A stretch of 63,856 nt of DNA from contig CM097882.1 of NCBI GenBank assembly GCA_044892505.1, positions 167,586,001 through 167,649,856 of the forward strand, given 5' to 3'. Shown one piece after another: positions 15,501-63,856 of the stretch. The notes below the pieces were generated by a model that did not search any database, was not told the DNA's origin, and saw only the letters and a program-made list of their open reading frames with translations. The position numbers and the translations under genes are program-made. The stretch comes from Schmidtea nova (Eukaryota). Each line of letters begins with the position of its first letter. The first letter of the stretch is position 1.

Positions 15501-18500
15501 AATTGTATGGCCCTTGTCTAAATATGACTCAAGTAATGTTGTTACTACAGAGCCAGAAATACCTAACCCTGTAATATTATTATTTATTTCAGTAGAAGAA
15601 CCAGTATAAATAATGAAATCAAGAATGAAACTAGTCACCACGTCACACAAAAGAAAAATTTTTATTCCAAATCTGTGTCTCTTAGAGGATATGTATTGTT
15701 CGATGTCGTGCTTGAAGAGATTAGCAAGTTTGCAATCTGTTTAATTTCTGCAATTCAGTCAATTTATATGGGACCCAATTTTGAAGCTTTTAGGCCATAC
15801 CAATTGTCTTTAAATATTCATGAACGATTCTTTTTGAAATAGAAAGATCTATAGCAAATCCTCGAACAGATTTTGTTGAATTTTGAGCAACAGCTTCACG
15901 TAAATCTTCCTCCGGCAGCGAGGCATATTTTCGAGATCAATTTCAATCATCAAATTTTTTAAACTAACGCCTAATAGTTATTTCATTAATTGTATCGAAT
16001 CCAAAAGCATTATTACTATTCCTCTTCACCTCAAATAAATTGATTTTCGATTTTTACTCATATAAATGAAGAAGTCTTAAATCATGATTTTCTAACTTGT
16101 ACATTTCTATTTGAAAATGAAATTTACAGTAATGAAATTATTATTAGCTTACTTAATATTTGAATTTGAAAAAAGAGCTTTCTAATGAACTTTAAAATAA
16201 AGAAATATGTTTTATATAAAAAAGTTATGACGATTTAAAATTATTATATATTATTCGGACATTTCATTCCGAACACTTAACAATACTTGAAACTAATTTA
16301 CATGGCAAGCTGACGATAAAAACAATTACTTCGAAGTATAGTTTAATTACTAAAAATTTGCCAACATATTTTACTTAGATTAGAATTTTTATTTGTTTGT
16401 TTTATGAACGAGTTTTCGTCATAATATTTAATTAACACATCAAATAAATAATTATTCACGCTGGTCTAGTAGTATCTGAAATAGTTAAGTTATAAACTTG
16501 CGTAAAAATTTGATATTAATACTTNNNNNNNNNNNNNNNNNNNNNNNNNNNNNNNNNNNNNNNNNNNNNNNNNNNNNNNNNNNNNNNNNNNNNNNNNNNN
16601 NNNNNNNNNNNNNNNNNNNNNNNNNNNNNNNNNNNNNNNNNNNNNNNNNNNNNNNNNNAAATAGAATTATCATTAGAAAATTGAAATCCCTGCAATATTA
16701 ATCTCCTGATACGCTCTGTTTATAACAAATGTTTATTATTACATTTATTAAATAAATATATCTCAATACTTTTCACTGATATAAAAATGTTTGTTTTTTA
16801 ATTAATTGCAGATTTAAAATTTTATGAATGAATTTTTAATGTGGTTTATTTTCAATTTGAGATACACAGACTACTAAATTCGGAAATCTTCGCGGAGTTG
16901 AGTTGAACTGAAACGTTCAAATAATTATTTGTATTTACCGTTGTGATTTGTAACTATAACCAATTCAGTTATTTAGAATCCATAAATGGTAACAGGTGTT
17001 GCAAAATTATTCATACACAAAAGAGCATAAGTTACGCGCGAGATAGCTAACAATTAATGTTATCTATTAGAATATATTAAATTATAAATAGTAAAAATGC
17101 ATATCTACTGAAAATCATGTCAACAAGCCGGGCTTCACCCGGAAAGCCGGTTTTAATGTTCCTGGTCCGGTTTTCATAAAAGTTTTGAAAAATTTAAAGC
17201 AGTAAATAAAAAATAATTATTTATTTTCATATTTGAGGGGCTAATATGTTAGTTAATGCGTGGTATGCATAGTGCAATACATGCATAGTATTTAAAACCT
17301 TTACATTTTTAATTTTATTTGCATTTATTTATATACATTTGATGTTATATCTTGTTTTCTTTGTTAATATCACATATATATATATATATATAGATAGATA
17401 GATAGTTACTTTGTGCAATTGGAAAAAGTGATTTCTAATAATAAAAACTTATTTTCATCTTCCAAGAATTGTGTTTTTTACCCAAATATCCGGGTCAACA
17501 ATTTTTCAAAGATGGTATCACTGCCTATGTTGGAAAAGGACAAAGATCAAGTGTAGTCATAAATTACGTGCATATACTATAGAAGAACAGAAAAATAAAT
17601 TATCTCACAAAGCACACATAAACAACACACAAAAATCATATAATAAAAAATACACACAAACAAATTAAATGCAAATTTTAACATTTAAAAAATGATTTTT
17701 GGAAATTTTTCAGAGAATTTGAATATTATTAACGATTTTGCGAGTTGAAGAATCTCATTGAAAGAAATAATTATCATTTAAAAAAAATTTTCACGAAAAT
17801 TAACATTTTTAAAATTAACAAAAACACTTGAAAAATCATCACATTTTTAAAAAAATCATAATTATATATTTAATTTAAAAATTAAAATACCATTATAATA
17901 TTAAAATATTGTAAATATAATCAAAACTTACTAAATTACTCCCAACTGCCCTTAATATGTGTCTCGTTTGCACGTAATAAACGGTAGCTGGTGTAGATTA
18001 GTGCCAACGGGTGTTTCAATGCAATTTTTCTCAGATTTTTGGAAAAAAATAATGAAATAATATCTTAAGTTCTATATTTTGAGTTATAATAAATTTATAT
18101 TTTCAAAGAATTTTGCAAAATTCTTTGCTAAAAGTTATTACGTTTTGCAAAGATGAGGATGTAATAGGGCATGAATTATTTTTATTTATAATTATTTTCT
18201 ATGTTCTTAGCCATTCAGATATTCATTGTACATCTATCGATTACACAACAATCGATACCTAAAATAATGTTCGAAAATCGAAAGTTGAAATAATATATAT
18301 TAAACAAGTTATTAGAGTGTGATTAGGAATTCATATATTTACAAAGCAGGACAATAAATGCTACTGACTACTTTCCTTTGGGAAGTTCACTTGAAATACC
18401 AAAATATTCGATCAAAAATATGATTTTAAAAATATAGTCGTCTATCAAAACAGTAGAAATGGTGTAAGCAAGCCTCGAAGATTAGTGTTTTACAAATAAA

Positions 18501-20626: not shown

Positions 20627-23600
20627 TATTATTATTATTATTATTATTATCAATAATTCTCATAATGATGACTATAGATCAAAAAATTTTTTTTAAACAA
20701 TACCACAATATTTCAGCACAGCTTTTATACACACTTAATAAAGGCTGTGCCGAAATATTGTGGTATTGTTTAAAAAAAATTTTTTGTTCTAGTCATCATT
20801 ATGAGAATTATTGATAATAACAATAAAAAAGATCAAAAGTGAAAAAAAGATAATTATGATAATAATAATAATAATCTACTATAACTCTGTATGGTTTATT
20901 TATTAATGAATATTTACTAAAAATTGTTAATTACAATATTGTGTAACTAAAATATATTGCTTACATAATAAGAAAATATTGTGATCTAGTCTTACAAAAG
21001 TTAAAATCATTGAATTAAAAAAAATTGAAGATAAAAATAAAATATGATGACAAAATACATTGTATTTAAAAATTATAAGTTAAAAATGATATTTTTGTAA
21101 ATTGTAATAAATTACCGTTAAAACTCACTTTCCTGCAATTTAACAAATTAAAAATTGTTTAAGATCAAATATACAATATTCACAATATTGACATTGATTT
21201 ATAAATATTTATTTATCAATATGGCGTTACATCCATGCTTTGTTACATAGAAAATTATAATAATAGATTATAATACTGATAAATCCATTATAACGATTTA
21301 TTTAATTTCAAGTTATAAATTTTTATTGAAAATTATTTTATTTTAAAGTTTCAGAGAATTTAAAACTATTTAACTATTTTAGAGATTTGTTAAATAAGGC
21401 ATGTGTCAATTTTTGTTTATTTTAAGGTTTACATATAGAAAACAAAGAAATTTATTTAGAAATTATTTGACATCACCTTAGAAAAAATATCACAAACATG
21501 TAAGTTAACATCCCACTTATGCTATGGATACATTTAAAAAGTAAAAGGTAACGAAATGTAGTTATACATGGATTGGAACATTTAACTAAAATCTAAATTT
21601 CAAAATAACCATAATTGGTTTAGCGCCTTATTTCTTAGAAACAAATCCAAAGAATTCAGTGATGTGGGACATCAAAAGCTTTCTTTTGCTAATCAAAGAA
21701 CAATATTTTCACTCCTATGATCACCTATTTATCATAATGTGTTTTGGGAGAGGTAAAATTGTTTTCATAACCTTTGTGATGGTCATAATTGGTCATAAAT
21801 GGTCATAATTCCTAAAAATAAAGTATATAAAAACAACAAAAGCCAAATTTAATTTTAAATAAAAAATCCCAAACAATGACATGACCTTATTGATTGTGAC
21901 ATATAAACCACAAACTAAGGATAACTATTATATATTTTGTATAAAATAAGTTTCAAGGCAAATAATGTTTATCACGAACCTTTCGCTATTATAGTGTAAA
22001 ATTATTCTACTATTATTACAATACTAAAGTGACGAAGATTTCGCATGATTCCAAATTTTAAAAAAGTGATATTAATAGAAATAACCAACTGCGATTGCGG
22101 TTTAAACTTTAAATATTTACGTGCATTATTTTAGTACTTGATCTTGTACAATATTTCGGATTTCCCATTGTTATTGACGGCAATGTGTAATCTTGAGTCT
22201 TTCGCTCCGTCCCTGTGTAAAACATTCGTCCGTCAAGTCTAAATAAGGAACTTAGATGGGCTGCCTTTGTAATTCATTAATAGTGTTTGCGAATGCAAAC
22301 CGAATGGGGAATTGTAAACGTTTAAATGAAAAAGGCAAGTCATTTAGGATTAATGGAATTCTTGTTATAAAAACTTGATGTTAGATCAGTGACAATTTTT
22401 AAGAATTTTATAAATAAAATATATATTATTCTTTAATTTTAATTATTTATATAATAAATTCTCGTACATACACATATATATATATATATATGTGGTGCGC
22501 CCAATTAGTCGTGAGTCTAAAATAGAAAGACTTAAGATATCAACACAAAACTTTGTATTTAGAACAAGCATGGTAAATAGGCATCATTTCTCAAAATAAT
22601 TTCCTTCTGCACTGACACAATTTTCCCAGCGAATAACGAGGTTTTCGAAGGCGTTTTTGAAGAATTATGGAGACTTTTCTCCCATAAAACTCTCCACGGC
22701 TGCTCTTAAATCATGTTTGTTGGCAAACACCTGGCCCCGCAGATGCTTCTTAAGATGGTTAAACAGGAAAAAATCGGAGGGAGCCAAATCAGGGCTGTAT
22801 GGTGGATGGGGAAGCAAATTGAGCTCACAACGCTCAATTTTGGCCATGGAAACGCTGCTGGTGTGGATGGGAGCAGTATCGTGTAAAAAATAGAGATCAC
22901 ACACTCTGCTCTTGCGTCGTGCCTTCCTTCCTTGCTGCACGATGTTGGAGTAGTAAGAACTATTAATCTTCACGCCGGATTCAGTAAAGTCAGTCAGAAT
23001 AATGCCATTGGCGTCTCAAAACACCGTCAGCATGAGAGCCTTTCGGTGGCAAGTTGAGGACCGAATTTTCAGTAAGTTGCTTTCTCCTAGCAGTTTCCAT
23101 TCTTGAGACTCTCTTTTAGATTCAAGAACATAAAGGGACAACGGTGTCTCGTCCACAGTGATGATATTATCAATGAAACGGTCTCCAACATTGGTCTTGA
23201 TCTGCAGATTCTCCAAGCAGCATTCCAAGCATCGTTGTCGCATTTCCACCGTTAAGAAGCGTGGCACAAAACGGGAACATAGTTTTTGAATACCACTTTC
23301 AGTGAGGAGAGTATGCACAGTGCCTTTGCTCACATTTAGACGGGTTGTGAGATCTCTTGTCGTTATTTTTCTCTCGTTTTGCACGATTGTCTGCAGCTTT
23401 TGCGTTATTTTTTCATCAATTTCTAAGGGTTTTCCAGATCTTTCTTCGTCCACCACGGAGGTTCTACCACTCTGAAAGTAATTGAACTAACAATAAATTG
23501 TTGCTGTAGATGGGCACTCCTTTTGGTAAACAGCTTTCAGTTCAGAAAGAACCTCTTCTCTATTTTTTCCTTTCAGAAAGAGAAAGCGAATAACGCTACG

Positions 23601-26600
23601 GTATTGAATAGTTTCCAGAGGCATATTTCGAATGTTCGCAAAAATATACTTAAACAATAATTAATTATTTAAACAAAATACATTTTCTTTACCTATATAT
23701 GTTGAAGTTTAAATATGCCTGTATCAATTTTTTTACTATTATTATTTCTATATTAGTCTCACGACTTATTGGGTACACCACGTATATATATATAATGTAA
23801 AATAAGCAAATTTTGATGATTTCTTTACTATTTTTATTATTATACAAAACTTAAAATCAAAAAATATTTGTTTTGTATATTAAGCGGAGTGCACAGTTAT
23901 GGGTATTCCATCAGTTACTACCAATCTTTCTGGATTTGGATGCTTTATGGAAGAACATCTCGAAGACCCAAAATCTTATGGAATTTATGTCATCGATAGA
24001 CGTTTTAAGAGTGGGGAAGAGTCGATACTTCAGCTTACTGATGTAAGCATAGATTTTTTATAAGGTTGCAAATAATTATTTATAAATAATGAAATTTTAA
24101 GTTTTCAAAAATGTTAATTTTGGTATATAAAATTATAAAGTAGTTTATCTGAACTTTTCTTAAATAAAAATAAAATAAAAAACATCACTAAAATAATTCA
24201 TCCTTCGTAATTAATAAACTATTTGCAATTTCTTTTTTCTTTCTTTTTTATATAACAAAAGAGCAATATATTCAATTCAAACTGTTAGCTTGCACAATTA
24301 AATATTTAATACAGATACAACTACAGTCGAACCCGCTTAAGACGAACCTCTTGGGGAAGGGGGAAAAATTCGAATTAACCGAACTTCGTCTTAACCAAAT
24401 AATAGAGAAACGGTCACAAAAACCATTCAATTCATGCCTCTCGCAAATGCTATCATTGCTAAACATAATAATACAATTTAAAGGGTCTATTAATTAAGCT
24501 TTGACAAGTATAGTACAAACAGTTCATTCACAAACAAAATTGAAGTACAAAATACATATCAGTCATGCTTAAAATAATCAGTAATAGATGTTTGTGTAAA
24601 ATTTGCTGTACGAGGAAGACATTAAAACAATAAATGAAATTTCTGATGATTTCATAAATGATTTTGGGAGAGAAAGCTCACATGTTTGTCGTTCGGAATC
24701 GTTACTATTTTCAGTAATATCAGTAGAGTTGGAGTATTTTTGAAGGAGGCAATTAAATGATGATATTGCAGTTGACTTAGAGTCTATCGGTGATAGATTA
24801 TCCAGACAACAACTACAGGACTGATTAGCCGACGTAGTCGGCTCTATAGGTTTGGTTTGCCGAGATTGTGTAATGATTTGCGGACGTTGACTAATTAGAT
24901 ATCGACAAATTGATAAGGCAAGCTTAACAGCTTCATTGTGTAATCCATTACTGCGTAACGCTAGGACTCTGAGACATGATAATGGCAATTGCTCTGGCCA
25001 AATACGTTTGACATCATCTTTGTCACTGAGAATTTCCTGTAAATGCGGAAAATCCCAGTTCTTATTATCTGCGATCAAAGCTAATCCGTTACAAAGTAAT
25101 GATAGTGATGACCTCATTTGAACTCCATTAGACCAAGGAGGATTTAAACAATCACGAATGTAGTCATATTCAGGCCGGTAGACATACCAACAGCCTTTAT
25201 ACATTTTGGGAACACAATCTTCTGGGTGTATATAATTATCGAAACAAGTTACCCATAAAACTAGTCTAACAAATTGGCTAGGATGTTCTGGTCTAGCTAC
25301 CATCCAGTATGGTGAAACGAATGCTACTGAGTTGAAAAGAAATGCAGCAAAAGCTAGACATAGAGCTAATTTCAAATTGACAATCTTTTTTTATCTCTTT
25401 GTCAATTCTTCGCAAATCAATTTATATATTTAAAAAATTGAAATATTCAAAAAAAATGTATTTCGACTCAAAAAATACAATTTTTAAATCCTCGAGAAAA
25501 TAATAATGCCATATTAAAACACCAAATACTTATTTTTTTTAAAGTAATTCATAACACAAAATTATATCATTCAAAAATATTAAATCTCGTAATACCATAA
25601 ACAGAGAATTTAGTCCATAAGATATACAAAATTTTTAGAAAAAAATCTATGATTAAATTACATAATTTTTTTAAACTTGAATTTTCTTAGATAATTGAGC
25701 AAATATATCATGATAAGTTCGATTTTCAATATACATGATTTCAAGACCATTCTGTAGCTTCAATTATTAGTGCCTTGATTGTTTTTTGGAGTTAACTCGT
25801 CATTAAAATGAACTGTTGAAAATCTAATAGCACTGAATAAAGTGAAAGTTTGAGGCAGACCATGTTCCTTTAATATTTTGAGAAAAGCTTCAATATCGAC
25901 CTTTTAGACCACTACAACCTAGTGGACAGGTTGTTTGAGATGTTGATTTTATGTTCGGAGAATAGGGATGTTGAGAAAGAATTAATAGTATGTAAGATAA
26001 AGAAACACTAACTCTTCTGAAAAAAGTGGAGAAACAGAGAAATCAGATAAACTTTGTAAAAAGTAACATTAGAGCGGCTCATGAGGAGATGCATAGATTG
26101 GAACAGAACAAACAGAAAAAAACAATGAGAAGAAAGCAGATGAAGAGAAGGACCAGAATGCTGGTTATGTCACAAAATTGACCGTACAAAATGGTCTGTC
26201 GGCTAAAATGAAAGCTAGAGTATTAGACGTGGCACAGAAGCGGACATATAAGCAAGAAATGCCCAGATAAAAAAGCGCCAGATTCTTTGGTTGTGTGAAA
26301 AAAAAGTCATATAAGAAGATTATGTTAGGAAATACGGTGTAAAAGATGCAACAGAAATGGTCATATATTCGAAGAATGGAAGAAGATGACAGGGAATAGT
26401 GTTTACAGACAAGTGAAGGTAGTTTTAGTAAGTCGTACCCAAACAACAGGAAATATATCGAAGTTAGTGAAAAGGACAAGAACTATATTTGTAATATTCA
26501 AGCAAAATTCGGCAGATAAGTAAAGGATGGAGAACGATTCATGTGAGCCTTGGAAAATCTAAAGATTAACAAAGATAACAAATTAAAAGAAATAAAAATG

Positions 26601-38400: not shown

Positions 38401-41400
38401 TCAAATCTAGTGACACAAAGTTTATTAACCCTTTAAGCGCCATAAATACGTTAAGTCGTTCTGTATTTCCGTGCGCGCAACGCTATCCATACAAAATAAT
38501 CCCGTAAACTCGGTTCACTCTGTACTTATTTTCATTAACTAATATCGAGTGTTTTGTGTGACATAAAATGTTTAACACATCGTGACATCTCTTGAAAATT
38601 CCCAACCTGTAATGCACGACCGTACTAATTATTTGCGGTTAAATAAGTAAAAATACTTATTTATAAAATATTTACTTATGAAAATACAATCAAATTTATT
38701 ATTCTTTAATTTTGCATTCACGAGACTATTTTAACTGAATTCGTTATAAAATGAAGATAATATTGTTCTCTTAAATTAAGCGTGGTGGTCAGGAGAAAAA
38801 AATAGAAAGCAATTTCTAAATATCCTGTTGTGCTACCTTCTATTATTGTCTATAATTCTTTATCTGTCCTTGTTGGTCCAGAATAGGGGTTTTAATTATT
38901 TTTAAGTGTTAATATTAATGCTTTAACTTTTATTAGTTTTATAGAATATTTTAAAATTGACATTCAATTGTTTTCATTAGTTTTAGGAAGCAACATTAAT
39001 CAACGTATCTTCTTGAACTCTGACAGAAACCTGTTTGTGGGTACTCATTAACACTAAAGGAAACTGCATAATTTTTCAAGATATTTTTAATGTGTTAGGG
39101 ATATACAAGTTTTCTCTCCATATGTTTCTTATTAAATAACTTCCATCCTGCAATATTGGAACTTGATTTTATAACACAATTTTCTTGATTTTGATTCACA
39201 AATAAGTGAAATAAGTCTTGAACACAGTCACTTTGAATAATTTTCAGAGAGGTAAATCTTTCTTTGAACAATTATCCTTTTAGTAAATGTAACAAAGAGT
39301 TAATATGACCCAATAAATTTCCCACCTTTCACTGACTAAAATTAAAGTATTTCGAAAAATGTCAATTTTAAATGACATCTCCAACTCTTAAATAGCAAAT
39401 TCACCAATCACTATGGATATATTTATCTTTTTTCTTTGGGTTTCCTTAATAAAACTAACAATTTTATAATAAAATCCATTCTAATTCTTTGCTTGTCATT
39501 TTTTAATCTCTTGTCAACAATTAAATTTTATTTTCTACCTCGCATTGACTGATGTTTTAAATTAATTTTTAATTTATTATTTAATATTTATACATTTGTG
39601 CCTCATAAGGTCCACATCAATTTAAAATTGTTTGATACAAATTTAGATTATCAATTACTGCTTGTTTCCACCCCCACTCCGAAACATGTTCACTTTTTCG
39701 CTTGTAATTCAGTTTATTTTAATTTTTATGTAAATAATTATGTATTATGTTTAAACTTAATAGGTGACATGGATTTCACACTAGCCCTTAGTTAAATTAA
39801 AAATAAAAAAAATGTAATGACCGACAGTAATTACTAATACCATCATATTTGGTATGTTTGATTTTTTTCCGGCTTCCAAAACATCTCCATTAAAATTTTG
39901 GACGTTGAAATTTAGGACGTTGAAATTAAGCAGCTAAAATTAAACGATTTTGATGCTTCTCATTGTGCCAATATTTTCATATTATCAATTGTAATTTAAG
40001 ATCCATTTTTCATCATACCTGACTATGCGATGCAAAAATGGTTCAACTTCATTTAATTGAGCATGGTTAATGTACGCTTATAGACGTCTTAATTTATGAC
40101 AATCTTTTAAGTCATGGTGAATTCATTTTAAGTTTTTCGCTTGCCTATGAGTTGCAAATGGTTTGCAATGGTTTGATGTGAAACAATAAATGCAGCATTG
40201 GAGTTCTTGATTCATTTTCCAGAGTGGGCTATAAATCTTGATCGTCAATTAAAGTGTCAGTCGATCTTTCTTGATCTTCAAAGCTAAAACTATTACTAGA
40301 AAGATGTTGAAACCAGAATCTGACTGTTCGTTCGATAACATAAGCATCAGGAAATTTAGAATTTATATTCCTCTCCACTTCAGCACTGTTGTGGGCCAAT
40401 TTAAACTCGTACCAAAATAAAAGTCGAAAATCGTCCATGTTTAACTAAGTAAAAATAAATTGTAAAACAACATTACGACAAAAAATTGTTTTATAATAAG
40501 TTGCATACTTGGAAATTTACCGAGAACTATACGTAATGGGTGTGGAAAAAACGCCACAACTGTGAAGACTACAACGTAATCGGCAACTTCATACTTTATA
40601 ACCTAATATTTATAATATTTTATAAAGCTTGATTTGCATAACAAATTTCAAAAAAAATTACGAATTAATTTAGAGGAAAAAATTGATTATCTTTGAAATA
40701 ATAATTTCATTCGTCTCATTCTTTTAATAAATAATAGAATAAATGTAAATTATTGTTCACTATTTCAATTAGTTTGTTTTCATTTTATTTTATTATGCAA
40801 ATTTCATTTAATTGAAAAATCTTAACAATTGTGATATCTTTGTGTCAGTATCAATTTAAATTCAGTTTTCATTTGTATGGGTTATAAAATTTTGTCGTTT
40901 TCCTATTCTATTAAATGAGATCTTGTGGATTTCAATCTAATTTAAATGATCAGGATATCGATATCACAGAATTTTAGCTAAATTAATTTAGAGGTCTGTN
41001 NNNNNNNNNNNNNNNNNNNNNNNNNNNNNNNNNNNNNNNNNNNNNNNNNNNNNNNNNNNNNNNNNNNNNNNNNNNNNNNNNNNNNNNNNNNNNNNNNNNN
41101 NNNNNNNNNNNNNNNNNNNNNNNNNNNNNNNNNNNNNNNNNNNNNNNNNNNNNNNNNNNNNNNNNNNNNNNNNNNNNNNNNNNNNNNNNNNNNNNNNNNN
41201 NNNNNNNNNNNNNNNNNNNNNCGATTGATTTCTTTATTTTTACGAAGCTTCTTTTACTCATAGCTTTTAGTTTCCAACTTTTTTCCACCGACCGCAACAG
41301 CTCGATGACTAGCTACAAATCCACTGGGATCGGTTTTGAATAACAGTGGCTTATCCATCTCCTTATCACAAGAAAATGCGATTATTGAACAGCCTAATGG

Positions 41401-44400
41401 CATCATTGCAGCTGATTGAATGTACAATTGATTAATATCGGCAATACATCGACAAGTCATGTCACAGGACAGTTCGCATTTAAATCGTGCAGCTTCCATT
41501 TGTGCACGGCATACTTGCGATCCGCAATCAGGAATCATTCCGGTCCTAACGCAACCGGTACTTTCAGTTATGTTAAATAATATTGTAGCTGAGATCTTTT
41601 CATTCATATTATCTGGGACTTTTCTTTGTGTAGCAACTACACCACAATCATTATCTCGAACACCAACAGAAATTAATCCATCTAACGCAATCGCTTTAAA
41701 TGCATAGTCGTCCTGAAATAATCTGCCTTCGGGTGAAAAAATTGTCATATTACGATCAAAGGCACTTGAATTCAAGAACATAACGGAAGTCCAAATTCCA
41801 ATGTTTATTTCCTAAATAAATCCCAAACGAAACAAAATCAAAATCCAAATCGCATTAATTAATTCCAATAGTTCGAAATCAAAAAGTACACATTAATTCA
41901 TAAATTCACTGACACAGTAAGCAAAAATTCAAATAGTCCCAATTACCAAACTTTATTCCATTTACAATGCCATTAGCTTCCAAATTAATTCAACGAAAAG
42001 CTAAATAACTCCACTCAGAAAAAAATTTAAAATCCGCCCTAAATAAATCAATTAATTAATTCAGTTAAACAACTCAATCAGAAAAAAATGTTTTTAATTA
42101 AGTTCCAAAATTCCACCCATTTATCCAATTTTTCACACCCAATAATTCCCTTTTTAAATTAACATACCCAAAATAATTACAATTAAACTCAATAAACAAA
42201 ATCCAAATCCATCTCAAAATAAATCAATTAAATCCGTCAAACAAATCGTTAACTATCTTTCGTTCCATAATTTATCTAAAAATCTCATTCTTTCTGGGAG
42301 TTCTCTATTCCATGAATCATAATCATACAATCCGAGTTAAATTATTGATTGGCGATATTTTGACGCTGTCGTAATTAAAGGTACGAGTGCACATAACAAG
42401 CGGCTGCTTCGTGGATATAATAAAGCATACTCTAAGTCTTCAAAGGGGATGTGAGACAATTTCAGATGCTCTTCCAGCATCAGATACAATCCCAAACCTT
42501 GGAATGCTGCACTGATGAATTGTACTAATTGGATAAGCTCGGTGCAATTATTCAGTGTTTGATAATCAATTTCTGAGACGTTTCCTAGAAACCATTCATC
42601 GAATGTTCGGATAAATTGCTGATGTCGGCTTTTGTCTTGCCATTTTCGAAATTTTATAACTAAAAAATCGATCGGATCCTGCTGGAATTCAGTGTTGTCG
42701 GAAAACATTGAGGAAATAGTTCCGAATTTCTCCATTTCATCTAACATTGCTTTGATTGATGTTACCAATCGGATGTCGGTACTAAATGCTCGGTCTGTAC
42801 ACCGACGCTGCAGCATTCCGCTTTCCGCTATTTCCTGATATTTAGTTGCCAATTTGCCCATTTTTGAATCACAGCCAAAATATCGATGACAATTAAATAG
42901 CATAAGACGAAAATCACACATAAACTCCTTGATATCGAGATAATCTGCACTTTCCATTTTATCCTGCATTTCATTGAGACATATTGGTTCTTTGACAATG
43001 CTTGTATAATCATTTAGATGGAGCTTTTTTGGATCAATTGGGTTTAAAAATGGACGAGTAATAATTGAATAACTACTAGACATGATGCTTGTTAGGATAT
43101 TGCGAGCACAATTCGTTTCAATCGACGAATTCATCATAAATTAATTAGAGTTAGTGATAAGACCTTCTAACGGCTTCCAGGCTCGTCCTACAATCTCTCA
43201 CAGCGATCAAGCACCCAATTAATTATTTTAATTATTATTTTAATTATTTAAATTTTTATTACTCTTTTTATTATAAATATTAATATTCTTATCATTATTC
43301 TTATTATTTTATTTATTTCAGGCTGAATCACAAACTAGATGTCAAACAATGTTGACCTTGCAACATGTTGTGATTGGACTAGGTTCAGCTGGCATTGGTT
43401 GTCATAAAGAAATCTTAAAGGTTACCAGATCTTGTCTTCTTGATCGATCAATGATTGTTAGAAGTGTGGCTTGCAAAGTAAGATATTTTTTGTATTTATT
43501 ATTTAATTGTTTTTGATATTATATGCAGTTATATTAATTTAATTTAAACATTATATTTAAAACCCTTTTTATTTTTAGTTTACAAAATATTTGGGATATT
43601 AAATATAGTAATTTTTCGAGCTAAACTAACATGCGTCATGATTTGAGTTGGAAAATCCCGACTTCGGCTTGTAAAAATAACGATTGAAAATAAATTATGT
43701 TTCACTATTGATTCGGAAATCTGATAGTATACACATGTAATTGTGTAGATATATAATATCACTATTTATGGTGTATGATTCATTTCCGCAGTATTAGAAG
43801 ATCTAGGATAGGATATAGAATTTAGCATAAAACTTGTTTGTCTTCTAAGGTTTTCAATGGAAACATTGGCTTTATTGGCCATCTTTTTAAGATCGAAATA
43901 AACATTGACGAGAAAGGCTAAACATTTTCAACTTTATTATTATATAGTAATAACGCAAAAANNNNNNNNNNNNNNNNNNNNNNNNNNNNNNNNNNNNNNN
44001 NNNNNNNNNNNNNNNNNNNNNNNNNNNNNNNNNNNNNNNNNNNNNNNNNNNNNNNNNNNNNNNNNNNNNNNNNNNNNNNNNNNNNNNNNNNNNNNNNNNN
44101 NNNNNNNNNNNNNNNNNNNNNNNNNNNNNNNNNNNNNNNNNNNNNNNNNNNNNNNNNNNNNNNNNNNNNNNNNNNNNNNNNNNNNNNNNNNNNNNNNNNN
44201 NNNNNNNNNNNNNNNNNNNNNNNNNNNNNNNNNNNNNNNNNNNNNNNNNNNNNNNNNNNNNNNNNNNNNNNNNNNNNNNNNNNNNNNNNNNNNNNNNNNN
44301 NNNNNNNNNNNNNNNNNNNNNNNNNNNNNNNNNNNNNNNNNNNTAAATTGAAATTCTAATTGTAAATTACAATTTAAAGTTTAAAATATCACTTATTTTA

Positions 44401-50000: not shown

Positions 50001-53000
50001 AATAGTGAAGTGAGAGTTGGAACTACACATGTTAGTATTTAATTTTTAATTTTGTCTGACATATTTTACTATTAATATTTATAATATTCTGAATTGTATT
50101 AGCAATTATAATTTGATATTCTGGATGTTAAATAAAATTATTGATAAATATACAAAAGACACGATAAAATAAATTGATACTGAAAAGAATGGTGCAGTGG
50201 ATAAACAATGTTACTGATAATATTGAAATTTTTATTTTTTTTATTGTATTAAATTTTATACAATCTTTTTTCAGGCTATTGTAGAATTTGGGAAATGTAT
50301 GGGTACAGCTTGGCTGGAGAGAAATTTGTCTGTGTTTATTAACAAAGTATTGGGATTAGTTGCTAACAGTAAGACCACTCCAACTCACGTTGAAGCTGTT
50401 TATGCAAGAAAGTGTGTAAATTTTATATTGAGAACGGTTATCAGTTTTCTTTTGTCGGATGGTGGTCAAATGTTGGCTGGAAGAGAATTATGTGATATTA
50501 TCAGATATGCTATGTCCAACATGAAGGTTAATCAAAAGTCAAGTTATACCCTAGACTCATTTAGTGAAGACGGAAGTAAAGTTTACCTAAATTCCTCTGG
50601 GGATAACAGTCATCATGTTCTCGTATGTGCCTTGCAAGAGCTAAGTTGCCTTGTTCAAGGACTTAATACAGGAGCAGGTAATTTTTTTATATTTTCTAAA
50701 ATTTTTAAAAAAAACTTCAAATAAGAATTTTTAAATTATCAGCACTGAAATTTAATTAGCGAACAAATTTTTAATTTAAAATGATTTTTTAAAAATTTGT
50801 AATTTTATTTAAAATTTTGTTAAAAACTAAAATTGATTTGCATTTTAGTAGTATTTATTTATAAATTTTAATGATAAATAATATAATAATTTTTTGATTT
50901 GAAATAATTGCGATGAAATTTTTTATTGTGTATTCAGCAATCTTACTTGAAGCACCATCTGCTATTGTCGACTGTATAATGCCGGTGCTCATTCATCCAA
51001 GCAACAGTGCACAATTATCAGCTGCATTTTGTCTTCGTTGTTTAGTGGAAGCGATACCTTCTCAAGTTATTCCAGTTCTTGAAAAATGTTTCAATAAATT
51101 AGATGCCTACAAATCAAGTCCAGAGGCCCTGATCGGTTATAGCTATGCTATAGCGGCTGTGATTGCTAGTGTCAGTCGTATAAATCAACCGATTTACGAT
51201 AAAGGCCAACAAGTTAGGGAAAATTATGTTTTTAATCAAAATTTACTAACACAAATGATTAATTTTTTTTAATGTTATGTCATCGATAATTCTACAATTA
51301 TTTTGGTTTTCATAAATGCATGTTTAAAAAGGAGAACATATACTAAATTTTTTATGCATGTTGCCAGATGTGTTTGATGGTAATCTGCAGTCGGGGGTGG
51401 TATATGTAGCAGCAGTTTCTAGATTTATGCTCGGCGAGATTAAATCTTGATCGAATTGGCTTTCACATAATTTATTATATACAGAAATTTTTGATATGCT
51501 ACATTTATTCTTTTTTTTCAGAAAATCATTATTATCACTCTTATCCAATTTTGATTTGGATTTGTGCCAAATGTTTATTAGAACACATTTTTATTATAAA
51601 TATTTTATTTCCATACACAAATTTGATAAAATTGCAATAACCTCTGGTTTTAATTGTTCCAAGGATTATTTCCAATAAAACAAATAACTCAACACTTGTC
51701 ACTTTCACATGTAGTATCGCGTGATCTCGCTAAGTTGGTGTAAATATTACATCGAAAATACTGAGATCTTCACTTAAATGTTGATTCAACGCCAAAATAA
51801 ATAGTTTAGAATTTCTGTCAAATCTAGAGGTTACATGAGCTATAGCAAGTTAATGAATATTTGTTTTTTATCATAATCAAACCGTTTTGGTTTTTGGATG
51901 ACTTATTGATTAACATTAATTTATAATATAATATCCAATGTTATTTCTAATGACATACGCGTTTGGAGTTTATTTTGATCTCGTTAGTACCACGTAAGAA
52001 ACTCAATCCCACATGGAATCGACCGAGTGACTTTATGACCAGACCTGACAATATAACCGCCTCAAATACCACAATTTGTTAACTGCTCTCATCAAATGTA
52101 TTATGTATATAAATCATTTGTCCGAGTCCATTAGTTATAGAATGTCATTGTTATTAAAATTATAATTTTAGTTCTGAAGGCTCAATTTAGCTTTTATAGA
52201 ATTTTTATTTTCAATACCAAATTAGTTAAGATTCTAAATTCAAAATTTTCAACGATTAATTTAAATATTTTTAGAATAATTTTTTTTGAAACATTTAAAC
52301 TATTATTTTGGCTAGATATTGGAGAAAGCAGAAGAAATCTTACGCTCCAATCAATCCAATTCGAGGCTAGCTCTAGCTGGCTCTCAATCGGCTTGGTTTC
52401 TTATTGGAGCGTGCTCAAATCTGGGGAGTGGTTTTATTAAAAGTCAACTGAAAAAGTTATTGCTTCTATGGAGAAATGCATTTCCGAAAAACAATCAAGA
52501 AATTGAAGCTGAAAGACAGCGTGGTGATGCGGTCACTTGGCAGGTACTATTTAATGTGAATTAATTTCTTAATTTTGGAGTAGTTTTACAGTTGACTTGA
52601 GTATAGTAAATTTTTTTCTTTTTCCAAAATTTATTAATATATTTAAAGCATTTTTTATTATTAAAATGTCCGATTTTTACAAAGAAAATATGAAATAATT
52701 CTGATAATAAAATAATATGTTTAGTAATCAGTCGAAAATTGCCTTTTAGCTAAACTGCAATTTAAAGCAGTTAAAAATCACTCGAGACATTGATAGTTGT
52801 ATGCATTTGCTTCAATTTACATTTTCCAAATATTTTTCTTCTTTTTGTACTTTCTTTTCACTATAATAAATAAAATAAACTCTCATAGACAAGTTAGGCT
52901 AATGCAAAAAGTAAGACGAATTTATAGTCACTGACAAATATTGTTAAACTCTATGTATATAAATTAAATATAACAACAAATTTGTTAATTTATTGTTATT

Positions 53001-62000: not shown

Positions 62001-63809
62001 CATTCGTCTTGTATAATTCAATTTATCGGTATCCATGAAAATTTTCCAAAGAAAACTGCTTAGAAATATCAAATATTTATAAATGTTTGAAATATAAAAG
62101 TATATTATTATACATATTTGAATATTAGTTGCAGCCAAATAGTGCAAGTGGTTCAGGGGCTTTAGAGCACGATGCGACGGCTCTTTTTCTAAGCGTTTCG
62201 TCTATATGTAAAGTAAGTTAACTTTTTTTTGCAATTTTACTAAGTTTGTATTAAATAAACTTTAGGTTAAAGGAATAGTAACCTATCCTTCTCCTTTACC
62301 ATTAGGTGTTGCAGTAATTGATTCATCAGTTCAATTATTTGGAATTCTTTTTCCAAAAATTCAATCTAAACATCGGCTTCAAATATTAGAACATTTTTCA
62401 GAATGTATTCGACAGGCAAAGTCCTTCCGACAGCAGGCAACTCAAATGAATATTTTTACAGCAGTTCTTTGTGCAATGCGTCGACTGGCTGAAACTAAAT
62501 CGTCTTTTGGAAGCGAACATAATCTAAAGAAGGAAGCCGTAACTTTAATATTTGTAAGATTTATTTTTTCTCAATTAGTTTTTAATTAAAATCTTAGGGT
62601 TCGCTAATAAACCAGAATCCAATTCTTCGATGTGCTGCTGGAGAATGTCTCGGAAGAATGGCACAAGTTATTGGTGATAGTAGTTTTATTGCCGAAATGG
62701 CGCAGTACAGTTTTGATCGGTTAAAAGCCGTGCGCGATGTGACTAATCGAACTGGTTATTCTCTCGCTTTAGGCTGTCTTCATAGATACGTTGGAAGTCT
62801 TGGTTCCGGGCAGCATTTGAGTACAAGTGTTGGTATTTTACTAGCTTTGGCCCAGGATACTAATTCTCCTGTTGTACAAGTAATCAGTATTCCTTTTTAT
62901 TAGTATTAATATTCATTTTCTATTCAAGGTTTGGTCTTTACACGCTCTGGCCCTCATTGCTGATTCTGGTGGACCGATGTTTGGAAATTATTTGGAATTG
63001 ACAATGAATTTGATTTTATCACTTTTATTAAATACTCCACCATCTCTAATTGATGTTCATCAGTGTTTAGGTAAAGTTCTTGGTGCTTTAATTACAACAC
63101 TTGGTCCAGAATTGCAAGGTATNNNNNNNNNNNNNNNNNNNNNNNNNNNNNNNNNNNNNNNNNNNNNNNNNNNNNNNNNNNNNNNNNNNNNNNNNNNNNN
63201 NNNNNNNNNNNNNNNNNNNNNNNNNNNNNNNNNNNNNNNNNNNNNNNNNNNNNNNNNNNNNNNNNNNNNNNNNNCAGTTTACGAATGTCATGCACCGTTA
63301 GTTGCTCTATTCTACAAGGACATCCGGATTCTCTTGTTCAAGCCGAAGCAGTATCATGTTTGCAACAATTACACATGTTTGCACCCAAACATGTCAATCT
63401 ATCTTCTTTGATTCCTCATCTTTATGAAGGTCTTTCTAGTCCCCATTTATTGTTGAGACGAGCTGTTGTAGCATGTTTGCGTCAATTGGCTCAGAAAGAA
63501 GACCCTAAAGAATTGGAAGAGGTTATATCACATATTATTCGTGATCAATCAAATAATAGAAAAGATGCGAAACAATCACAAAGAAATCAGTCTGTTGGAA
63601 AATCAGTTAGATCTGATCCAACTGCATCTGATATCCTTCAAGCTGCTTTACTGTCAAAAGGTTTAGAGGGTGCATTATTTCAGCTGTTGGATTTTGAACA
63701 GGATCACAAATTATGTTCTGATTTGCAAGATACACTGTTATGTCTATTACAATCTCAAGGAGAAGATCAATTAACAAAATGGTTGCAGTTATTGAAAGAA
63801 GTCATTCAA
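32334..63809 (+). CDS. HEATR5B: HEAT repeat-containing protein 5 (HEATR5B-like), 5' part; gene continues beyond the window
   Basis: Exons 32334-32459, 32510-32824, 43322-43477, 48185-48350, 49861-50030, 50275-50677, 50938-51212, 52316-52543, 53090-53336, 59651-59814, 62129-62212, 62266-62553, 62598-62879, 62929-63118 and (start in gap) ~63275-63809. Phases are consistent. N-terminus [11 protein letters not shown]...[17 protein letters not shown] and motifs [47 protein letters not shown] match HEATR5. Confidence 0.96.
32510..32824 (+). CDS. HEATR5B: HEATR5B exon 2
   Basis: SPGPSTR...[14 protein letters not shown]...GRMVG. Confidence 0.94.
32950..33210. mobile_element. MITE with 34-bp TIRs
   Basis: cgatggttcaaaggtaaaagtcactaactacatt / aatgtagttagcgacttttacctttgaaccatcg (1 mismatch). 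Confidence 0.85.
35380..37150 (-). mobile_element. Decayed mariner related to 22491-23782, split by an insert of about 0.8 kb
   Basis: 35380-36010 parallels the C-terminal half and 36830-37150 the N-terminal half of the 22.5-kb copy. Confidence 0.75.
39960..40606 (-). mobile_element. mariner N-terminal remnant with one TIR
   Basis: [32 protein letters not shown]...RTVRFWF, degenerate RIV.YDEKWI, TIR-like ttaggttataaagtatg. Confidence 0.8.
41254..41781 (-). pseudogene. PSMA6: Intronless proteasome subunit alpha type-6 copy; 3' end runs into an N gap
   Basis: [43 protein letters not shown]. Lacks the YKYGY segment and has a stop at 41254-41256 before the normal C-terminus. Confidence 0.9.
42253..43137 (-). 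pseudogene. Intronless KIAA2026/BRD10-like bromodomain copy (266-aa open ORF 42337-43137, plus a further in-frame segment past one stop)
   Basis: Bromodomain PFLNPID...[25 protein letters not shown] and [13 protein letters not shown]...YDSW resemble recalled KIAA2026 ADFRLML and IVFYELERCLLMP...YRTW. Bromodomain is secure; the ortholog call is moderate. Confidence 0.75.
43135..43174 (-). other. Planarian-type spliced-leader (SL) exon, 40 nt, fused to the bromodomain ORF
   Basis: Minus strand GCCGTTAGAAGGTCTTATCACTAACTCTAATTAATTTATG. The first 19 nt match the recalled Schmidtea SL GCCGTTAGACGGTCTTATC at 18/19. It ends in ATG like flatworm SLs and is followed by coding sequence, not a GT donor. 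Confidence 0.88.
43322..43477 (+). CDS. HEATR5B: HEATR5B exon 3
   Basis: [13 protein letters not shown]...[12 protein letters not shown]; absent from the ORF track. Confidence 0.92.
45898..46775 (+). pseudogene. PKM: Processed pyruvate kinase pseudogene (N-terminal half, frameshifted, with deletions)
   Basis: [56 protein letters not shown] and ISKIEN in colinear order, no introns. Confidence 0.92.
47029..47064. repeat. (AAT)n microsatellite
   Basis: Directly visible. Confidence 0.9.
48185..48350 (+). CDS. HEATR5B: HEATR5B exon 4
   Basis: [14 protein letters not shown]. Confidence 0.93.
48780..49264. repeat. Long near-perfect palindrome (foldback element), arms about 240 bp, bounded by N gaps
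   Basis: The left arm is the reverse complement of the right arm with only a few mismatches; centre near 49040. Confidence 0.95.
49691..49804. repeat. Short hairpin inverted repeat
   Basis: aataagtaacaaaataagcctttgctgcaaaaataat / attatttttgcaacaaaggcttattttgttacttgttt. Confidence 0.85.
49861..50030 (+). CDS. HEATR5B: HEATR5B exon 5
   Basis: Phase-consistent; ends EVRVGTTH with gttagt donor. Confidence 0.88.
50275..50677 (+). CDS. HEATR5B: HEATR5B exon 6
   Basis: [36 protein letters not shown]. Confidence 0.93.
50938..51212 (+). CDS. HEATR5B: HEATR5B exon 7
   Basis: [23 protein letters not shown]. Confidence 0.93.
52316..52543 (+). CDS. HEATR5B: HEATR5B exon 8
   Basis: LLLWRNAFP...RGDAVTWQ. 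Confidence 0.93.
53090..53336 (+). CDS. HEATR5B: HEATR5B exon 9
   Basis: [10 protein letters not shown]...[16 protein letters not shown]. Confidence 0.93.
54129..54725 (+). mobile_element. hAT Charlie/ZBED5-like non-autonomous remnant
   Basis: cagtgatctccaaa terminus; [25 protein letters not shown] dimerisation-domain motif. Confidence 0.8.
56663..56763. repeat. Short hairpin inverted repeat
   Basis: About 48-bp imperfect arms around a 4-nt loop (aaaaaggca acgc tgcctttt). Confidence 0.8.
59651..59814 (+). CDS. HEATR5B: HEATR5B exon 10
   Basis: [14 protein letters not shown]...[15 protein letters not shown]; absent from the ORF track. Confidence 0.94.
60052..60283. mobile_element. piggyBac-type MITE
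   Basis: TTAA|cccgttaacgccca ... tgggctataacggg|TTAA. Confidence 0.8.
60426..60666. mobile_element. piggyBac-type MITE
   Basis: TTAA|ctctttgaggcatgg ... ccatgccccaaagag|TTAA. Confidence 0.82.
62129..62212 (+). CDS. HEATR5B: HEATR5B exon 11
   Basis: [15 protein letters not shown]. Confidence 0.93.
62266..62553 (+). CDS. HEATR5B: HEATR5B exon 12
   Basis: [17 protein letters not shown]...[10 protein letters not shown]. Confidence 0.93.
62598..62879 (+). CDS. HEATR5B: HEATR5B exon 13
   Basis: [18 protein letters not shown]...LALAQD. Confidence 0.94.
62929..63118 (+). CDS. HEATR5B: HEATR5B exon 14
   Basis: [17 protein letters not shown]...GPELQ. Confidence 0.93.
63275..63809 (+). CDS. HEATR5B: HEATR5B exon 15 (true start hidden in N gap; 3' donor approximate)
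   Basis: [43 protein letters not shown]; likely donor caa|gtgaat. Confidence 0.88.
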
Positions 63810-63856
63810 GTGAATTACTAATTAATTAATTAAAAATTTTATGGTTTAATTAATTA

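What the first reader, a model, noticed from the sequence alone, without database searches (positions are those of the whole stretch)
43135..43174. Genomic fossil of a trans-spliced mRNA: a spliced-leader exon fused to a coding sequence and supplying its ATG
Seen: on the minus strand a 40-nt stretch GCCGTTAGAAGGTCTTATCACTAACTCTAATTAATTTATG is joined directly to ATG AAT TCG..., and its terminal ATG is the first codon of the 266-aa bromodomain ORF (MMNSS). Established: triclad SL exons begin GCCGTTAGACGGTCTTATC (recalled Schmidtea sequence, 18/19 match here), and flatworm SLs end in AUG that can initiate translation. An SL RNA gene would continue with a GT donor and an Sm site, which this does not. 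Inference: this is a reverse-transcribed, full-length 5' end of a mature trans-spliced mRNA. The 3' half of the leader differs from the Schmidtea SL, so it may be this species' own SL or an undescribed SL variant.
Basis: partly seen in the sequence, partly recalled or inferred. Interest (0 to 1): 0.9.

Follow-up and report, generated by a model that had tools for sequence, protein, structure and literature searches.

The report
Spliced-leader-tagged processed pseudogene in a flatworm
A decayed, intron-free copy of the front end of a bromodomain gene still carries at its 5' end the short leader that flatworms add to mRNAs by trans-splicing, so it was made from a mature mRNA; this is an expected by-product of retroposition, but a useful marker and apparently not yet reported for planarian genes.

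Summary
On the minus strand, 43174..43135 is a 40-nt leader ending in ATG, joined directly to ATGAAT of a 266-codon ORF.

The first 19 nt match, at 18 of 19 positions, the 5' end of a 41-nt leader that opens two unrelated full-length mRNAs in a public metatranscriptome (L005, L007). One of these shows the same leader-ATG|gene-ATG junction.

The ORF is the N-terminal quarter of a BRD10/KIAA2026-like bromodomain protein, which is about 1200-1400 aa in other flatworms. It starts at the natural N-terminus.

It runs uninterrupted across three intron positions found in relatives, one of them shared by a triclad relative, a monogenean and a trematode. It also has a net 90-nt in-frame deletion and a stop codon with homology continuing behind it. 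Homology ends near 42238.

So this is a processed pseudogene derived from an SL trans-spliced mRNA, lying antisense in an intron of a HEAT-repeat gene.

Not shown: the species' own SL RNA gene, the parental gene, a poly(A) tail or target-site duplications. The copy is cut short at its 3' end, which does not fit simple LINE-type retroposition.

SL-tagged retrogenes are well known in dinoflagellates, and leader remnants beside retrotransposons have been noted in parasitic flatworms. This is a new member of a known kind, of moderate interest.

The parts
43135..43174 (-). Spliced-leader relic, 40 nt, ending in ATG
   Evidence: Read. The 5' 19 nt match the leader of L005/L007 at 18/19, once in the window with 0 expected. 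The 3' 21 nt differ from that leader (15 of 25 aligned columns identical).
42340..43134 (-). Intron-free coding remnant of a BRD10/KIAA2026-like bromodomain gene, starting at the gene's own ATG (43134..43132), codons 2-266 of the ORF
   Evidence: Pfam Bromodomain E 1.2e-16 and weak KIAA2026_hel. Aligns from the natural N-terminus of the Cichlidogyrus and Clonorchis orthologues. Uninterrupted at intron positions i1 (42969|42968), i3 (42819|42818) and i4 (42538|42537), which are split in L002/L001; i1 is also split in L008 and L009.
42835..42840 (-). Site of a net 90-nt in-frame deletion (codons 100-101, YQ, replace 32 residues)
   Evidence: P0001, P0019, P0035 and P0089 all carry LE..FEQKL..LP... 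at this point. The deleted stretch includes conserved intron position i2.
42337..42339 (-). Premature stop (TAA), where the relative P0002 has Lys
   Evidence: tblastn of P0002 runs through the stop.
42238..42336 (-). Post-stop tail still homologous to the gene, with a second stop; homology ends at about 42238
   Evidence: tblastn of P0002 residues 8-101 covers 42540..42259. The DNA alignment to L001 reaches about 42238. See also the alignment. No further piece of the gene is found anywhere in the window.
43175..43220 (-). 46-nt flank immediately 5' of the leader, much richer in G+C than the adjacent intron; origin unknown
   Evidence: About 47% GC against 0-12% in the next 80 nt. No Rfam match and no copy elsewhere in the window.
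41800..42235 (-). C-poor, G/T-rich degenerate tandem repeat (period about 180 nt) abutting the 3' end of the copy
   Evidence: Repeat families D1, D3 and D4 with spacings of 176-189 nt. 0-4 C per 40 nt. No A-run.
43322..43477 (+). Putative exon of the host gene on the opposite strand (AG acceptor, GT donor, 52 open codons); the copy starts 147 nt upstream of its acceptor
   Evidence: Read. ORF. Further plus-strand HEAT-repeat exons lie at 50299-51272 and 62977-63821. That this exon belongs to the same gene is inferred, not tested.

Best explanation
This is a processed pseudogene made from a mature, SL trans-spliced mRNA of a BRD10/KIAA2026-like bromodomain gene. In the parent, a spliced leader of about 40 nt ending in AUG was trans-spliced to an acceptor lying directly before the start codon, giving leader-AUG|AUG-AAU. 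A reverse transcriptase copied this mRNA through to its capped 5' end, and the cDNA was inserted antisense into an intron of a HEAT-repeat gene. The copy then decayed: one substitution in the conserved 5' half of the leader, a net 90-nt deletion, a premature stop, and replacements at otherwise invariant residues. Shown: leader identity for the 5' half, intron absence, start at the natural N-terminus, and the lesions. Inferred: the parental acceptor, which enzyme did the copying, and why only the first 940 nt or so are present. For the last point I favour a template switch by the reverse transcriptase onto an internal position of this mRNA, followed by copying to its 5' end. A later deletion or rearrangement at the tandem repeat that abuts the copy fits equally well.
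For: Leader. The 19-mer with N at position 10 found two transcript-like contigs of one JGI sample. Each begins with G plus an identical 41-nt leader ending in ATG, followed by unrelated coding sequences. L007 is a full-length mRNA with AATAAA and poly(A). L005 has leader-ATG|ATG in frame, as here. In the window the site is unique and not expected by chance.

Processing. Intron positions i1, i3 and i4 of the triclad relative (L002/L001) are continuous in the window. i1 is also present, in the same phase, in Cichlidogyrus (L008) and Clonorchis (L009).

Junction. The ORF aligns from residue 2 with the natural N-termini of the orthologues. In those genes an AG lies 0 nt (Clonorchis) or 4 nt (Cichlidogyrus) before the ATG.

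Decay. There is a stop with about 30 homologous codons behind it, a 30-residue deletion, and window-only changes at Y84H, R110Q, P127S and R170S.
Against: No poly(A) tract, no target-site duplication and no flanking LTR were found. The copy is truncated at the 3' end rather than the 5' end, the opposite of typical LINE-made retrocopies. The 3' 21 nt of the leader match no leader I could reach. Neither an SL RNA gene nor the parental gene of this species was available. A 46-nt G+C-rich piece sits directly upstream of the leader, where a capped mRNA should have nothing.
Confidence: 0.85

Rival explanations
1. The copy is one segment of a single chimeric retro-insertion. The reverse transcriptase began on another RNA downstream (the adjacent PSMA6-like copy), switched templates, landed inside the bromodomain mRNA, copied it to its cap, and perhaps switched once more (the 46-nt flank). 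This is a rival only for the mechanism of insertion, not for the RNA origin.
For: Two intron-free, decayed gene copies lie on the same strand 460 nt apart. The Clonorchis PSMA6 gene spans 13.8 kb for 247 aa. The bromodomain copy is complete at the 5' end and cut at the 3' end, as expected for the template reached by a switch. A foreign-looking 46 nt precedes the leader. Partial and multi-gene retrocopies made by template switching are documented in animals (PMC5131818).
Against: The two copies are separated by a tandem repeat of unknown origin. No LTR or retroelement sequence flanks them. The 3' end of the PSMA6-like copy lies in a masked stretch, so neither a poly(A) tail nor duplications around the whole unit can be seen.
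Confidence: 0.25
2. The locus is a working retrogene that encodes a short bromodomain protein, translated from the leader-derived ATG.
For: A 266-codon ORF is still open, and the one indel seen is in frame.
Against: The stop falls inside conserved sequence and homology continues behind it. The deletion removes the conserved stretch LE..FEQKL that follows the Pfam bromodomain match. Residues invariant in all relatives are replaced. Three quarters of the protein is missing. No promoter is evident, and the copy lies antisense in another gene's intron.
Confidence: 0.07
3. The join is an assembly or cDNA-contamination artefact.
For: The window contains many masked or gap stretches. The S. polychroa paper reports SL-bearing transcripts mapping as chimeras in planarian data (PMC10899757).
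Against: The sequence is continuous without N from 41222 to 43961, running through both flanks. The copy carries a stop, a deletion and a truncation that a fresh cDNA would not have.
Confidence: 0.03
4. The 40-mer is a cis-encoded 5' UTR or a chance resemblance, or the locus is a rearranged SL RNA gene.
For: The 3' half of the leader has no verified counterpart.
Against: An 18/19 match, placed so that a 40-nt unit ends in ATG exactly at the natural start of a conserved protein, has 0 chance expectation. The same 19-mer is 5'-terminal on unrelated mRNAs. There is no GT donor or Sm-like site after the leader. A DNA rearrangement could not join an SL exon precisely to a splice acceptor.
Confidence: 0.02

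Closest known systems
SL-relict retrogenes of dinoflagellates (DinoSL-tagged 'recycled' genes)
   Same: A DNA-encoded remnant of a trans-spliced leader at the 5' end of a gene copy marks origin from a mature mRNA (PMC6050394, PMC5585692).
   Different: Those are very numerous, mostly expressed and often still contain introns, and the relict lies in the 5' UTR, sometimes in several nested copies. Here there is a single decayed, truncated copy in an animal, with the leader's ATG fused in frame to the start codon.
Partial leader sequences next to LTR and LINE elements in parasitic flatworm genomes
   Same: Same phylum and same logic: leader remnants in the genome are interpreted as integration of trans-spliced transcripts (PMC12582326).
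   Different: Those were discarded SL-RNA candidates linked to mobile elements. Here the leader is complete and heads a copy of a cellular gene. No mobile element flanks it, and the host appears to be a free-living triclad.
Classical LINE-made processed pseudogenes
   Same: Intron-free, promoterless, decayed, and inserted away from the parental context.
   Different: Those keep the 3' end with poly(A) and target-site duplications and tend to lose the 5' end. This copy keeps the complete 5' end and lacks the 3' three quarters, poly(A) and detectable duplications.
Template-switch (LTR-mediated or chimeric) retrocopies
   Same: Partial mRNA copies, no poly(A), sometimes several parental genes side by side (PMC5131818).
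   Different: That class is defined by flanking LTR retrotransposon sequence with microsimilarity at the joins. None was found here.
Triclad spliced-leader RNAs (Schmidtea SL1, SL2 and SL3; Zayas 2005 and Rossi 2014, as cited in PMC12582326)
   Same: The conserved 5' 19 nt, a length near 40 nt and a 3'-terminal AUG. The comparison with L005/L007 is a tool result.
   Different: This is not an SL RNA gene: there is no donor site and no Sm site. The 3' half differs from the one leader I could retrieve.

Membership tests
Processed pseudogene / retrocopy | Lacks the introns of the parental gene | tested here: met
   Continuous at i1, i3 and i4, which are split in L002/L001. i1 is also split in L008 and L009. 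The parent of the same species was not available, so relatives stand in for it. P0001, the closest relative, also ends at i4.
Processed pseudogene / retrocopy | Carries a post-transcriptional mark of mature mRNA | tested here: met
   A trans-spliced leader at the 5' end.
Processed pseudogene / retrocopy | 3' poly(A) tract | tested here: not met
   Homology ends at about 42238 inside the coding region and is followed by a G/T-rich repeat with no A-run.
Processed pseudogene / retrocopy | Target-site duplications | tested here: inconclusive
   No convincing direct repeat flanks the copy. The boundaries are uncertain on both sides, and AT-rich flanks give chance matches.
Processed pseudogene / retrocopy | Disabling lesions | tested here: met
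   A stop with homology behind it, a 30-residue deletion, and loss of three quarters of the gene.
Flatworm (triclad-type) spliced leader | The same sequence at the 5' terminus of unrelated mRNAs | tested here: inconclusive
   Met for the 5' 19 nt (18/19 to the leader of L005 and L007). Not testable for the 3' 21 nt, because no transcriptome of the source species was reachable. That L005/L007 come from a triclad was not established.
Flatworm (triclad-type) spliced leader | About 35-42 nt long with a 3'-terminal AUG | tested here: met
   40 nt ending in ATG. The L005/L007 leader is 41 nt ending in ATG.
Flatworm (triclad-type) spliced leader | Encoded by SL RNA genes (leader + GT donor + Sm site) elsewhere in the genome | not testable with these tools
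   No second copy in the window. Rfam has no matching family. Collection scans returned only two transcripts and bacterial chance hits.
Flatworm (triclad-type) spliced leader | Joined at a 3' splice acceptor of the target pre-mRNA | tested here: inconclusive
   Orthologues have an AG directly before the start codon (Clonorchis) or 4 nt before it (Cichlidogyrus). The first exon of a triclad parent was not found.
SL RNA gene | Leader followed by a GT donor and an Sm-binding site | tested here: not met
   The leader is followed by ATGAATTCG and 265 codons of bromodomain-protein sequence.
BRD10/KIAA2026-like bromodomain protein | N-terminal bromodomain followed by the KIAA2026 helical domain | tested here: met
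   Bromodomain at 60.9 bits. KIAA2026_hel reaches only 16.5 bits in the decayed copy, but it is on record for P0002, P0019 and P0035, to which the copy aligns.

The most novel reading that the evidence does not exclude
The 3' half of the leader preserves an SL class of the source species that has not been described. On this reading the locus is also one of many SL-tagged retrocopies made by a reverse transcriptase that reaches the cap and switches templates. Leader relics could then serve in flatworms, as DinoSL does in dinoflagellates, as an exact genome-wide marker of retroposition and of the enzyme responsible for it.
Probability: 0.3. Interest if true: 0.6.

Novelty: new member of a known kind. 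Interest (0 to 1): 0.4.

Why it matters
A leader relic proves RNA origin without relying on intron loss. If such copies are common in planarian genomes, they would give a clean census of retroposition. They would also give a handle on which retroelement drives it, since a complete 5' end with a missing 3' end and no poly(A) argues against simple LINE priming. They would preserve a fossil record of past SL variants too. For annotation, the case is a warning: a leader-derived ATG can make a dead fragment look like a complete ORF.

Tried and rejected
- **Rfam:** neither the window at gathering thresholds nor the locus at permissive E-values gave anything, and Rfam has no family matching the leaders of L005/L007.
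- **Full-text searches for the leader:** DNA and RNA spellings of both halves gave no relevant paper. Zayas 2005 and Rossi 2014 are not held. The S. polychroa SL is only in an image.
- **Collection scans with the 19-mer:** the three other metagenome hits and both bacterial-genome hits are G+C-rich chance matches. Viral contigs gave nothing.
- **Exact look-up of the 266-aa ORF:** not on record.
- **Search with the first 56 residues for a triclad first exon:** no candidate.
- **Rest of the gene:** tblastn with full-length orthologues found no other piece in the window.
- **Repeat and ORF scans for duplications, LTRs or element ORFs near the copy:** none found.
- **Idea that the 46-nt flank is a small RNA picked up by template switching:** no support from Rfam.
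- **Idea that a conserved AATAAA in the relative's coding sequence explains the 3' end by premature polyadenylation:** no A-run follows, so I dropped it.
- **My first gap-lenient DNA alignment:** it produced spurious blocks outside the exons, so I used only the exon-level matches.

Full report
**Observation.** It is followed without a break by ATGAATTCG. Its last three bases are the first codon of the ORF 42337..43137, 266 aa, MMNSS.... Pfam finds a bromodomain at residues 15-99 (E 1.2e-16) and sub-threshold matches to the KIAA2026 helical and DDT domains near the C-terminus. Neither half of the 40-mer occurs again in the window at up to 3 mismatches, and shuffles expect none.

**Is it a spliced leader?** No held paper prints a triclad SL (for the two key papers), so I looked for natural examples.

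- A scan of public metagenome contigs with the 19-mer, leaving position 10 free, returned five loci. Three are G+C-rich bacterial chance hits.
- The other two, L005 and L007, come from one JGI sample and carry the match at the very end of the contig. Each begins with G followed by an identical 41-nt leader ending in ATG, and then diverges into unrelated coding sequence.
- L007 is a complete mRNA: leader, a 456-aa ORF that I read as a thiolase or trifunctional-enzyme beta subunit (not scanned), AATAAA and poly(A).
- L005 encodes a 465-aa protein that I read as SAM50-like (not scanned). It shows leader-ATG directly followed by the gene's ATG, giving MM..., the same arrangement as in the window. 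In L007 the leader's ATG is out of frame with the main ORF, so the leader's AUG is not always the initiator.

An identical 5' terminus on unrelated full-length mRNAs is what defines a spliced leader. The window's first 19 nt match it at 18 of 19, once, with zero chance expectation. The mismatch (C10 to A) breaks the small 5' hairpin predicted for the L005/L007 leader. That fits a mutation acquired after insertion.

The 3' 21 nt are much less similar: 15 of 25 aligned columns, against 18 of 19 for the 5' half (rough Fisher p 0.013). Decay that left the 5' half almost intact cannot explain this. The 3' half is more likely a different species' or a different class of leader, but this is unverified. 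I could not establish which organism L005/L007 come from.

**What the leader is attached to.** A full-library search found two classes of relatives.

- Flatworm proteins of 1174 aa (Cichlidogyrus casuarinus, P0019) and 1381 aa (Clonorchis sinensis, P0035). Both have a bromodomain at the extreme N-terminus followed by the KIAA2026 helical domain.
- Closer fragments: P0001 (a UniParc entry, about 82% identical to the window copy over aligned columns) and P0002/P0004, from genomic contigs of one sequencing run of a related species (L001, L002).

The window ORF aligns from its second residue with the natural N-termini of the orthologues. The leader therefore sits exactly where a trans-spliced leader would sit on this mRNA. 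In the orthologous genes an AG lies immediately before the start codon (Clonorchis, L009) or 4 nt before it (Cichlidogyrus, L008). That is compatible with a trans-splice acceptor there, but it is not proof. A search for the first exon of a triclad parent found nothing.

**Processed origin.** The related triclad gene has four introns in this region:

- i1, after KEPICLNQ, phase 1 in the Met codon.
- i2, in LLP|I, phase 2, with a GC-AG intron.
- i3, in ESG|ML.
- i4, after ...CSE.

i1 and i2 occur at the same positions and phases in the monogenean gene, and i1 also in the trematode gene. P0001 also ends by reading into i4. The window sequence is continuous at i1 (42969|42968), i3 (42819|42818) and i4 (42538|42537). 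i2 cannot be judged, because it lies inside a deletion. Absence of three introns, one of them shared across flatworm classes, combined with a leader that is only added to RNA, shows the copy came from a spliced mRNA.

**Decay and extent.**

- Codons 100-101 (YQ) replace 32 residues present in every relative, a net 90-nt in-frame loss.
- The ORF ends at a TAA where the relative P0002 has Lys. About 30 further codons behind the stop are still homologous and end in a second stop.
- Residues that are the same in P0001 and in at least one outgroup are changed only in the window copy: Y84H, R110Q, P127S and R170S. Window-unique changes outnumber those of P0001 with each of three outgroups: 7 vs 5, 10 vs 3 and 11 vs 4.
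- Homology ends near 42238, and no other part of the gene is in the window.

The locus therefore holds the leader plus roughly the first quarter of the coding sequence. It is a pseudogene, not a 266-aa gene.

**Context.** The copy lies antisense, 147 nt upstream of the acceptor of a plus-strand exon (43322-43477: AG, 52 open codons, GT). I infer that this exon belongs to the HEAT-repeat gene whose exons follow at 50.3-51.3 and 63.0-63.8 kb. Sequence is continuous without N from 41222 to 43961.

Directly 3' of the copy is a C-poor, degenerate tandem repeat with a period of about 180 nt (41800-42235). After that, on the same strand, comes an intron-free proteasome alpha-6-like ORF (41254-41781). 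It is only 55-60% identical to flatworm PSMA6 and has an in-frame stop with homology behind it. The Clonorchis PSMA6 gene spans 13.8 kb. This is therefore probably a second processed pseudogene. It carries no leader.

Directly 5' of the leader are 46 nt at about 47% G+C, next to intron sequence at 0-12% G+C. They match no RNA family and nothing else in the window.

**Mechanism.** The RNA origin is well supported. How the copy was inserted is not.

- There is no poly(A), no convincing target-site duplication, no LTR and no element ORF nearby.
- A copy complete at the 5' end but lacking the 3' three quarters is the reverse of the usual LINE product.
- One reading that fits is a template switch: a reverse transcriptase working on another RNA jumps to an internal position of this mRNA and runs to its cap. 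Partial and multi-gene retrocopies of this kind are documented (PMC5131818).
- The neighbouring PSMA6-like copy and the foreign-looking 46 nt are compatible with that reading, but the diagnostic flanking element sequence is absent.
- A full-length retrocopy later truncated at the tandem repeat fits equally well.

I rate the RNA-origin claim at 0.85 and the single chimeric-event variant at about 0.25.

**Comparison with what is known.** Leader relicts as a hallmark of retrogenes are well established in dinoflagellates (PMC6050394, PMC5585692). In parasitic flatworms, 597 candidate SL loci were discarded because they held only partial leaders next to LTR or LINE elements. The authors read these as integrated trans-spliced retrotransposon transcripts (PMC12582326). 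Searches combining 'spliced leader' with processed pseudogene or retrocopy terms found no report of a leader-tagged copy of a cellular gene in an animal. The library is not complete, so this is absence of evidence only. Given that planarians both trans-splice and carry active retroelements (an intact 814-aa gypsy-type pol ORF lies at 1161-3605), such copies are expected. I file this as a new member of a known kind.

**Verdict.** Corrections: the gene has its own ATG right after the leader's; the ORF is a truncated pseudogene; and the retrocopy lacks the classical 3' signatures. Interest is moderate (0.4): a clean and instructive case, but a single locus of a predictable kind.

Noticed in passing
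window 41254-41781 (-), running into the masked stretch 41000-41221: An intron-free proteasome alpha-6-like ORF, only 55-60% identical to flatworm PSMA6. It has an in-frame stop followed by homologous codons and no leader. It is probably a second processed pseudogene, on the same strand 460 nt downstream of the first.
   Followed up: partly
window 41800-42235: A degenerate tandem repeat with a period of about 180 nt, almost free of C on the minus strand. It starts exactly where homology to the bromodomain gene ends. Origin unknown.
   Followed up: partly
window 43175-43220 (-): 46 nt at about 47% G+C directly upstream of the leader, next to intron sequence of 0-12% G+C. It matches no RNA family and has no repeat in the window. 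It could belong to the insertion, which a capped mRNA alone would not explain.
   Followed up: partly
window 43322-43477, 50299-50724, 50913-51272, 62977-63821 (+): Exons of a plus-strand HEAT-repeat gene (Pfam HEAT in the last one). To my eye it looks HEATR5-like, but I did not test that. Both pseudogenes lie antisense in one of its introns.
   Followed up: partly
window 1161-3605 (-): An intact 814-aa gypsy-type pol ORF (protease, reverse transcriptase, RNase H): a possible local source of reverse transcriptase.
   Followed up: partly
window 10705-11151, 15126-15650, 23016-23456 (-): Fragments of piggyBac-type transposases (DDE_Tnp_1_7) and a Tc/mariner-like HTH ORF, that is, DNA-transposon debris.
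   Followed up: partly
window 8691-9119 (+): An ORF matching positions 322-448 of glycogen synthase (E 1e-46), probably an exon of a real gene.
   Followed up: no
L013:1-33 and L014:1-35: PSMA6 transcripts from two different JGI samples start with the same leader-like sequence of about 30 nt, ending ...TTATAATG at the start codon. This may be the spliced leader of another organism.
   Followed up: no
L002:247-292: Intron i2 of the related species' gene appears to use a GC-AG donor (GCAAGT). The same intron position has a GT donor in the monogenean gene.
   Followed up: no
window 24578-25375 (-): A 265-aa ORF with a weak claudin/Clc-like N-terminus followed by unrelated sequence. It may be a chimeric or decayed gene piece.
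   Followed up: no
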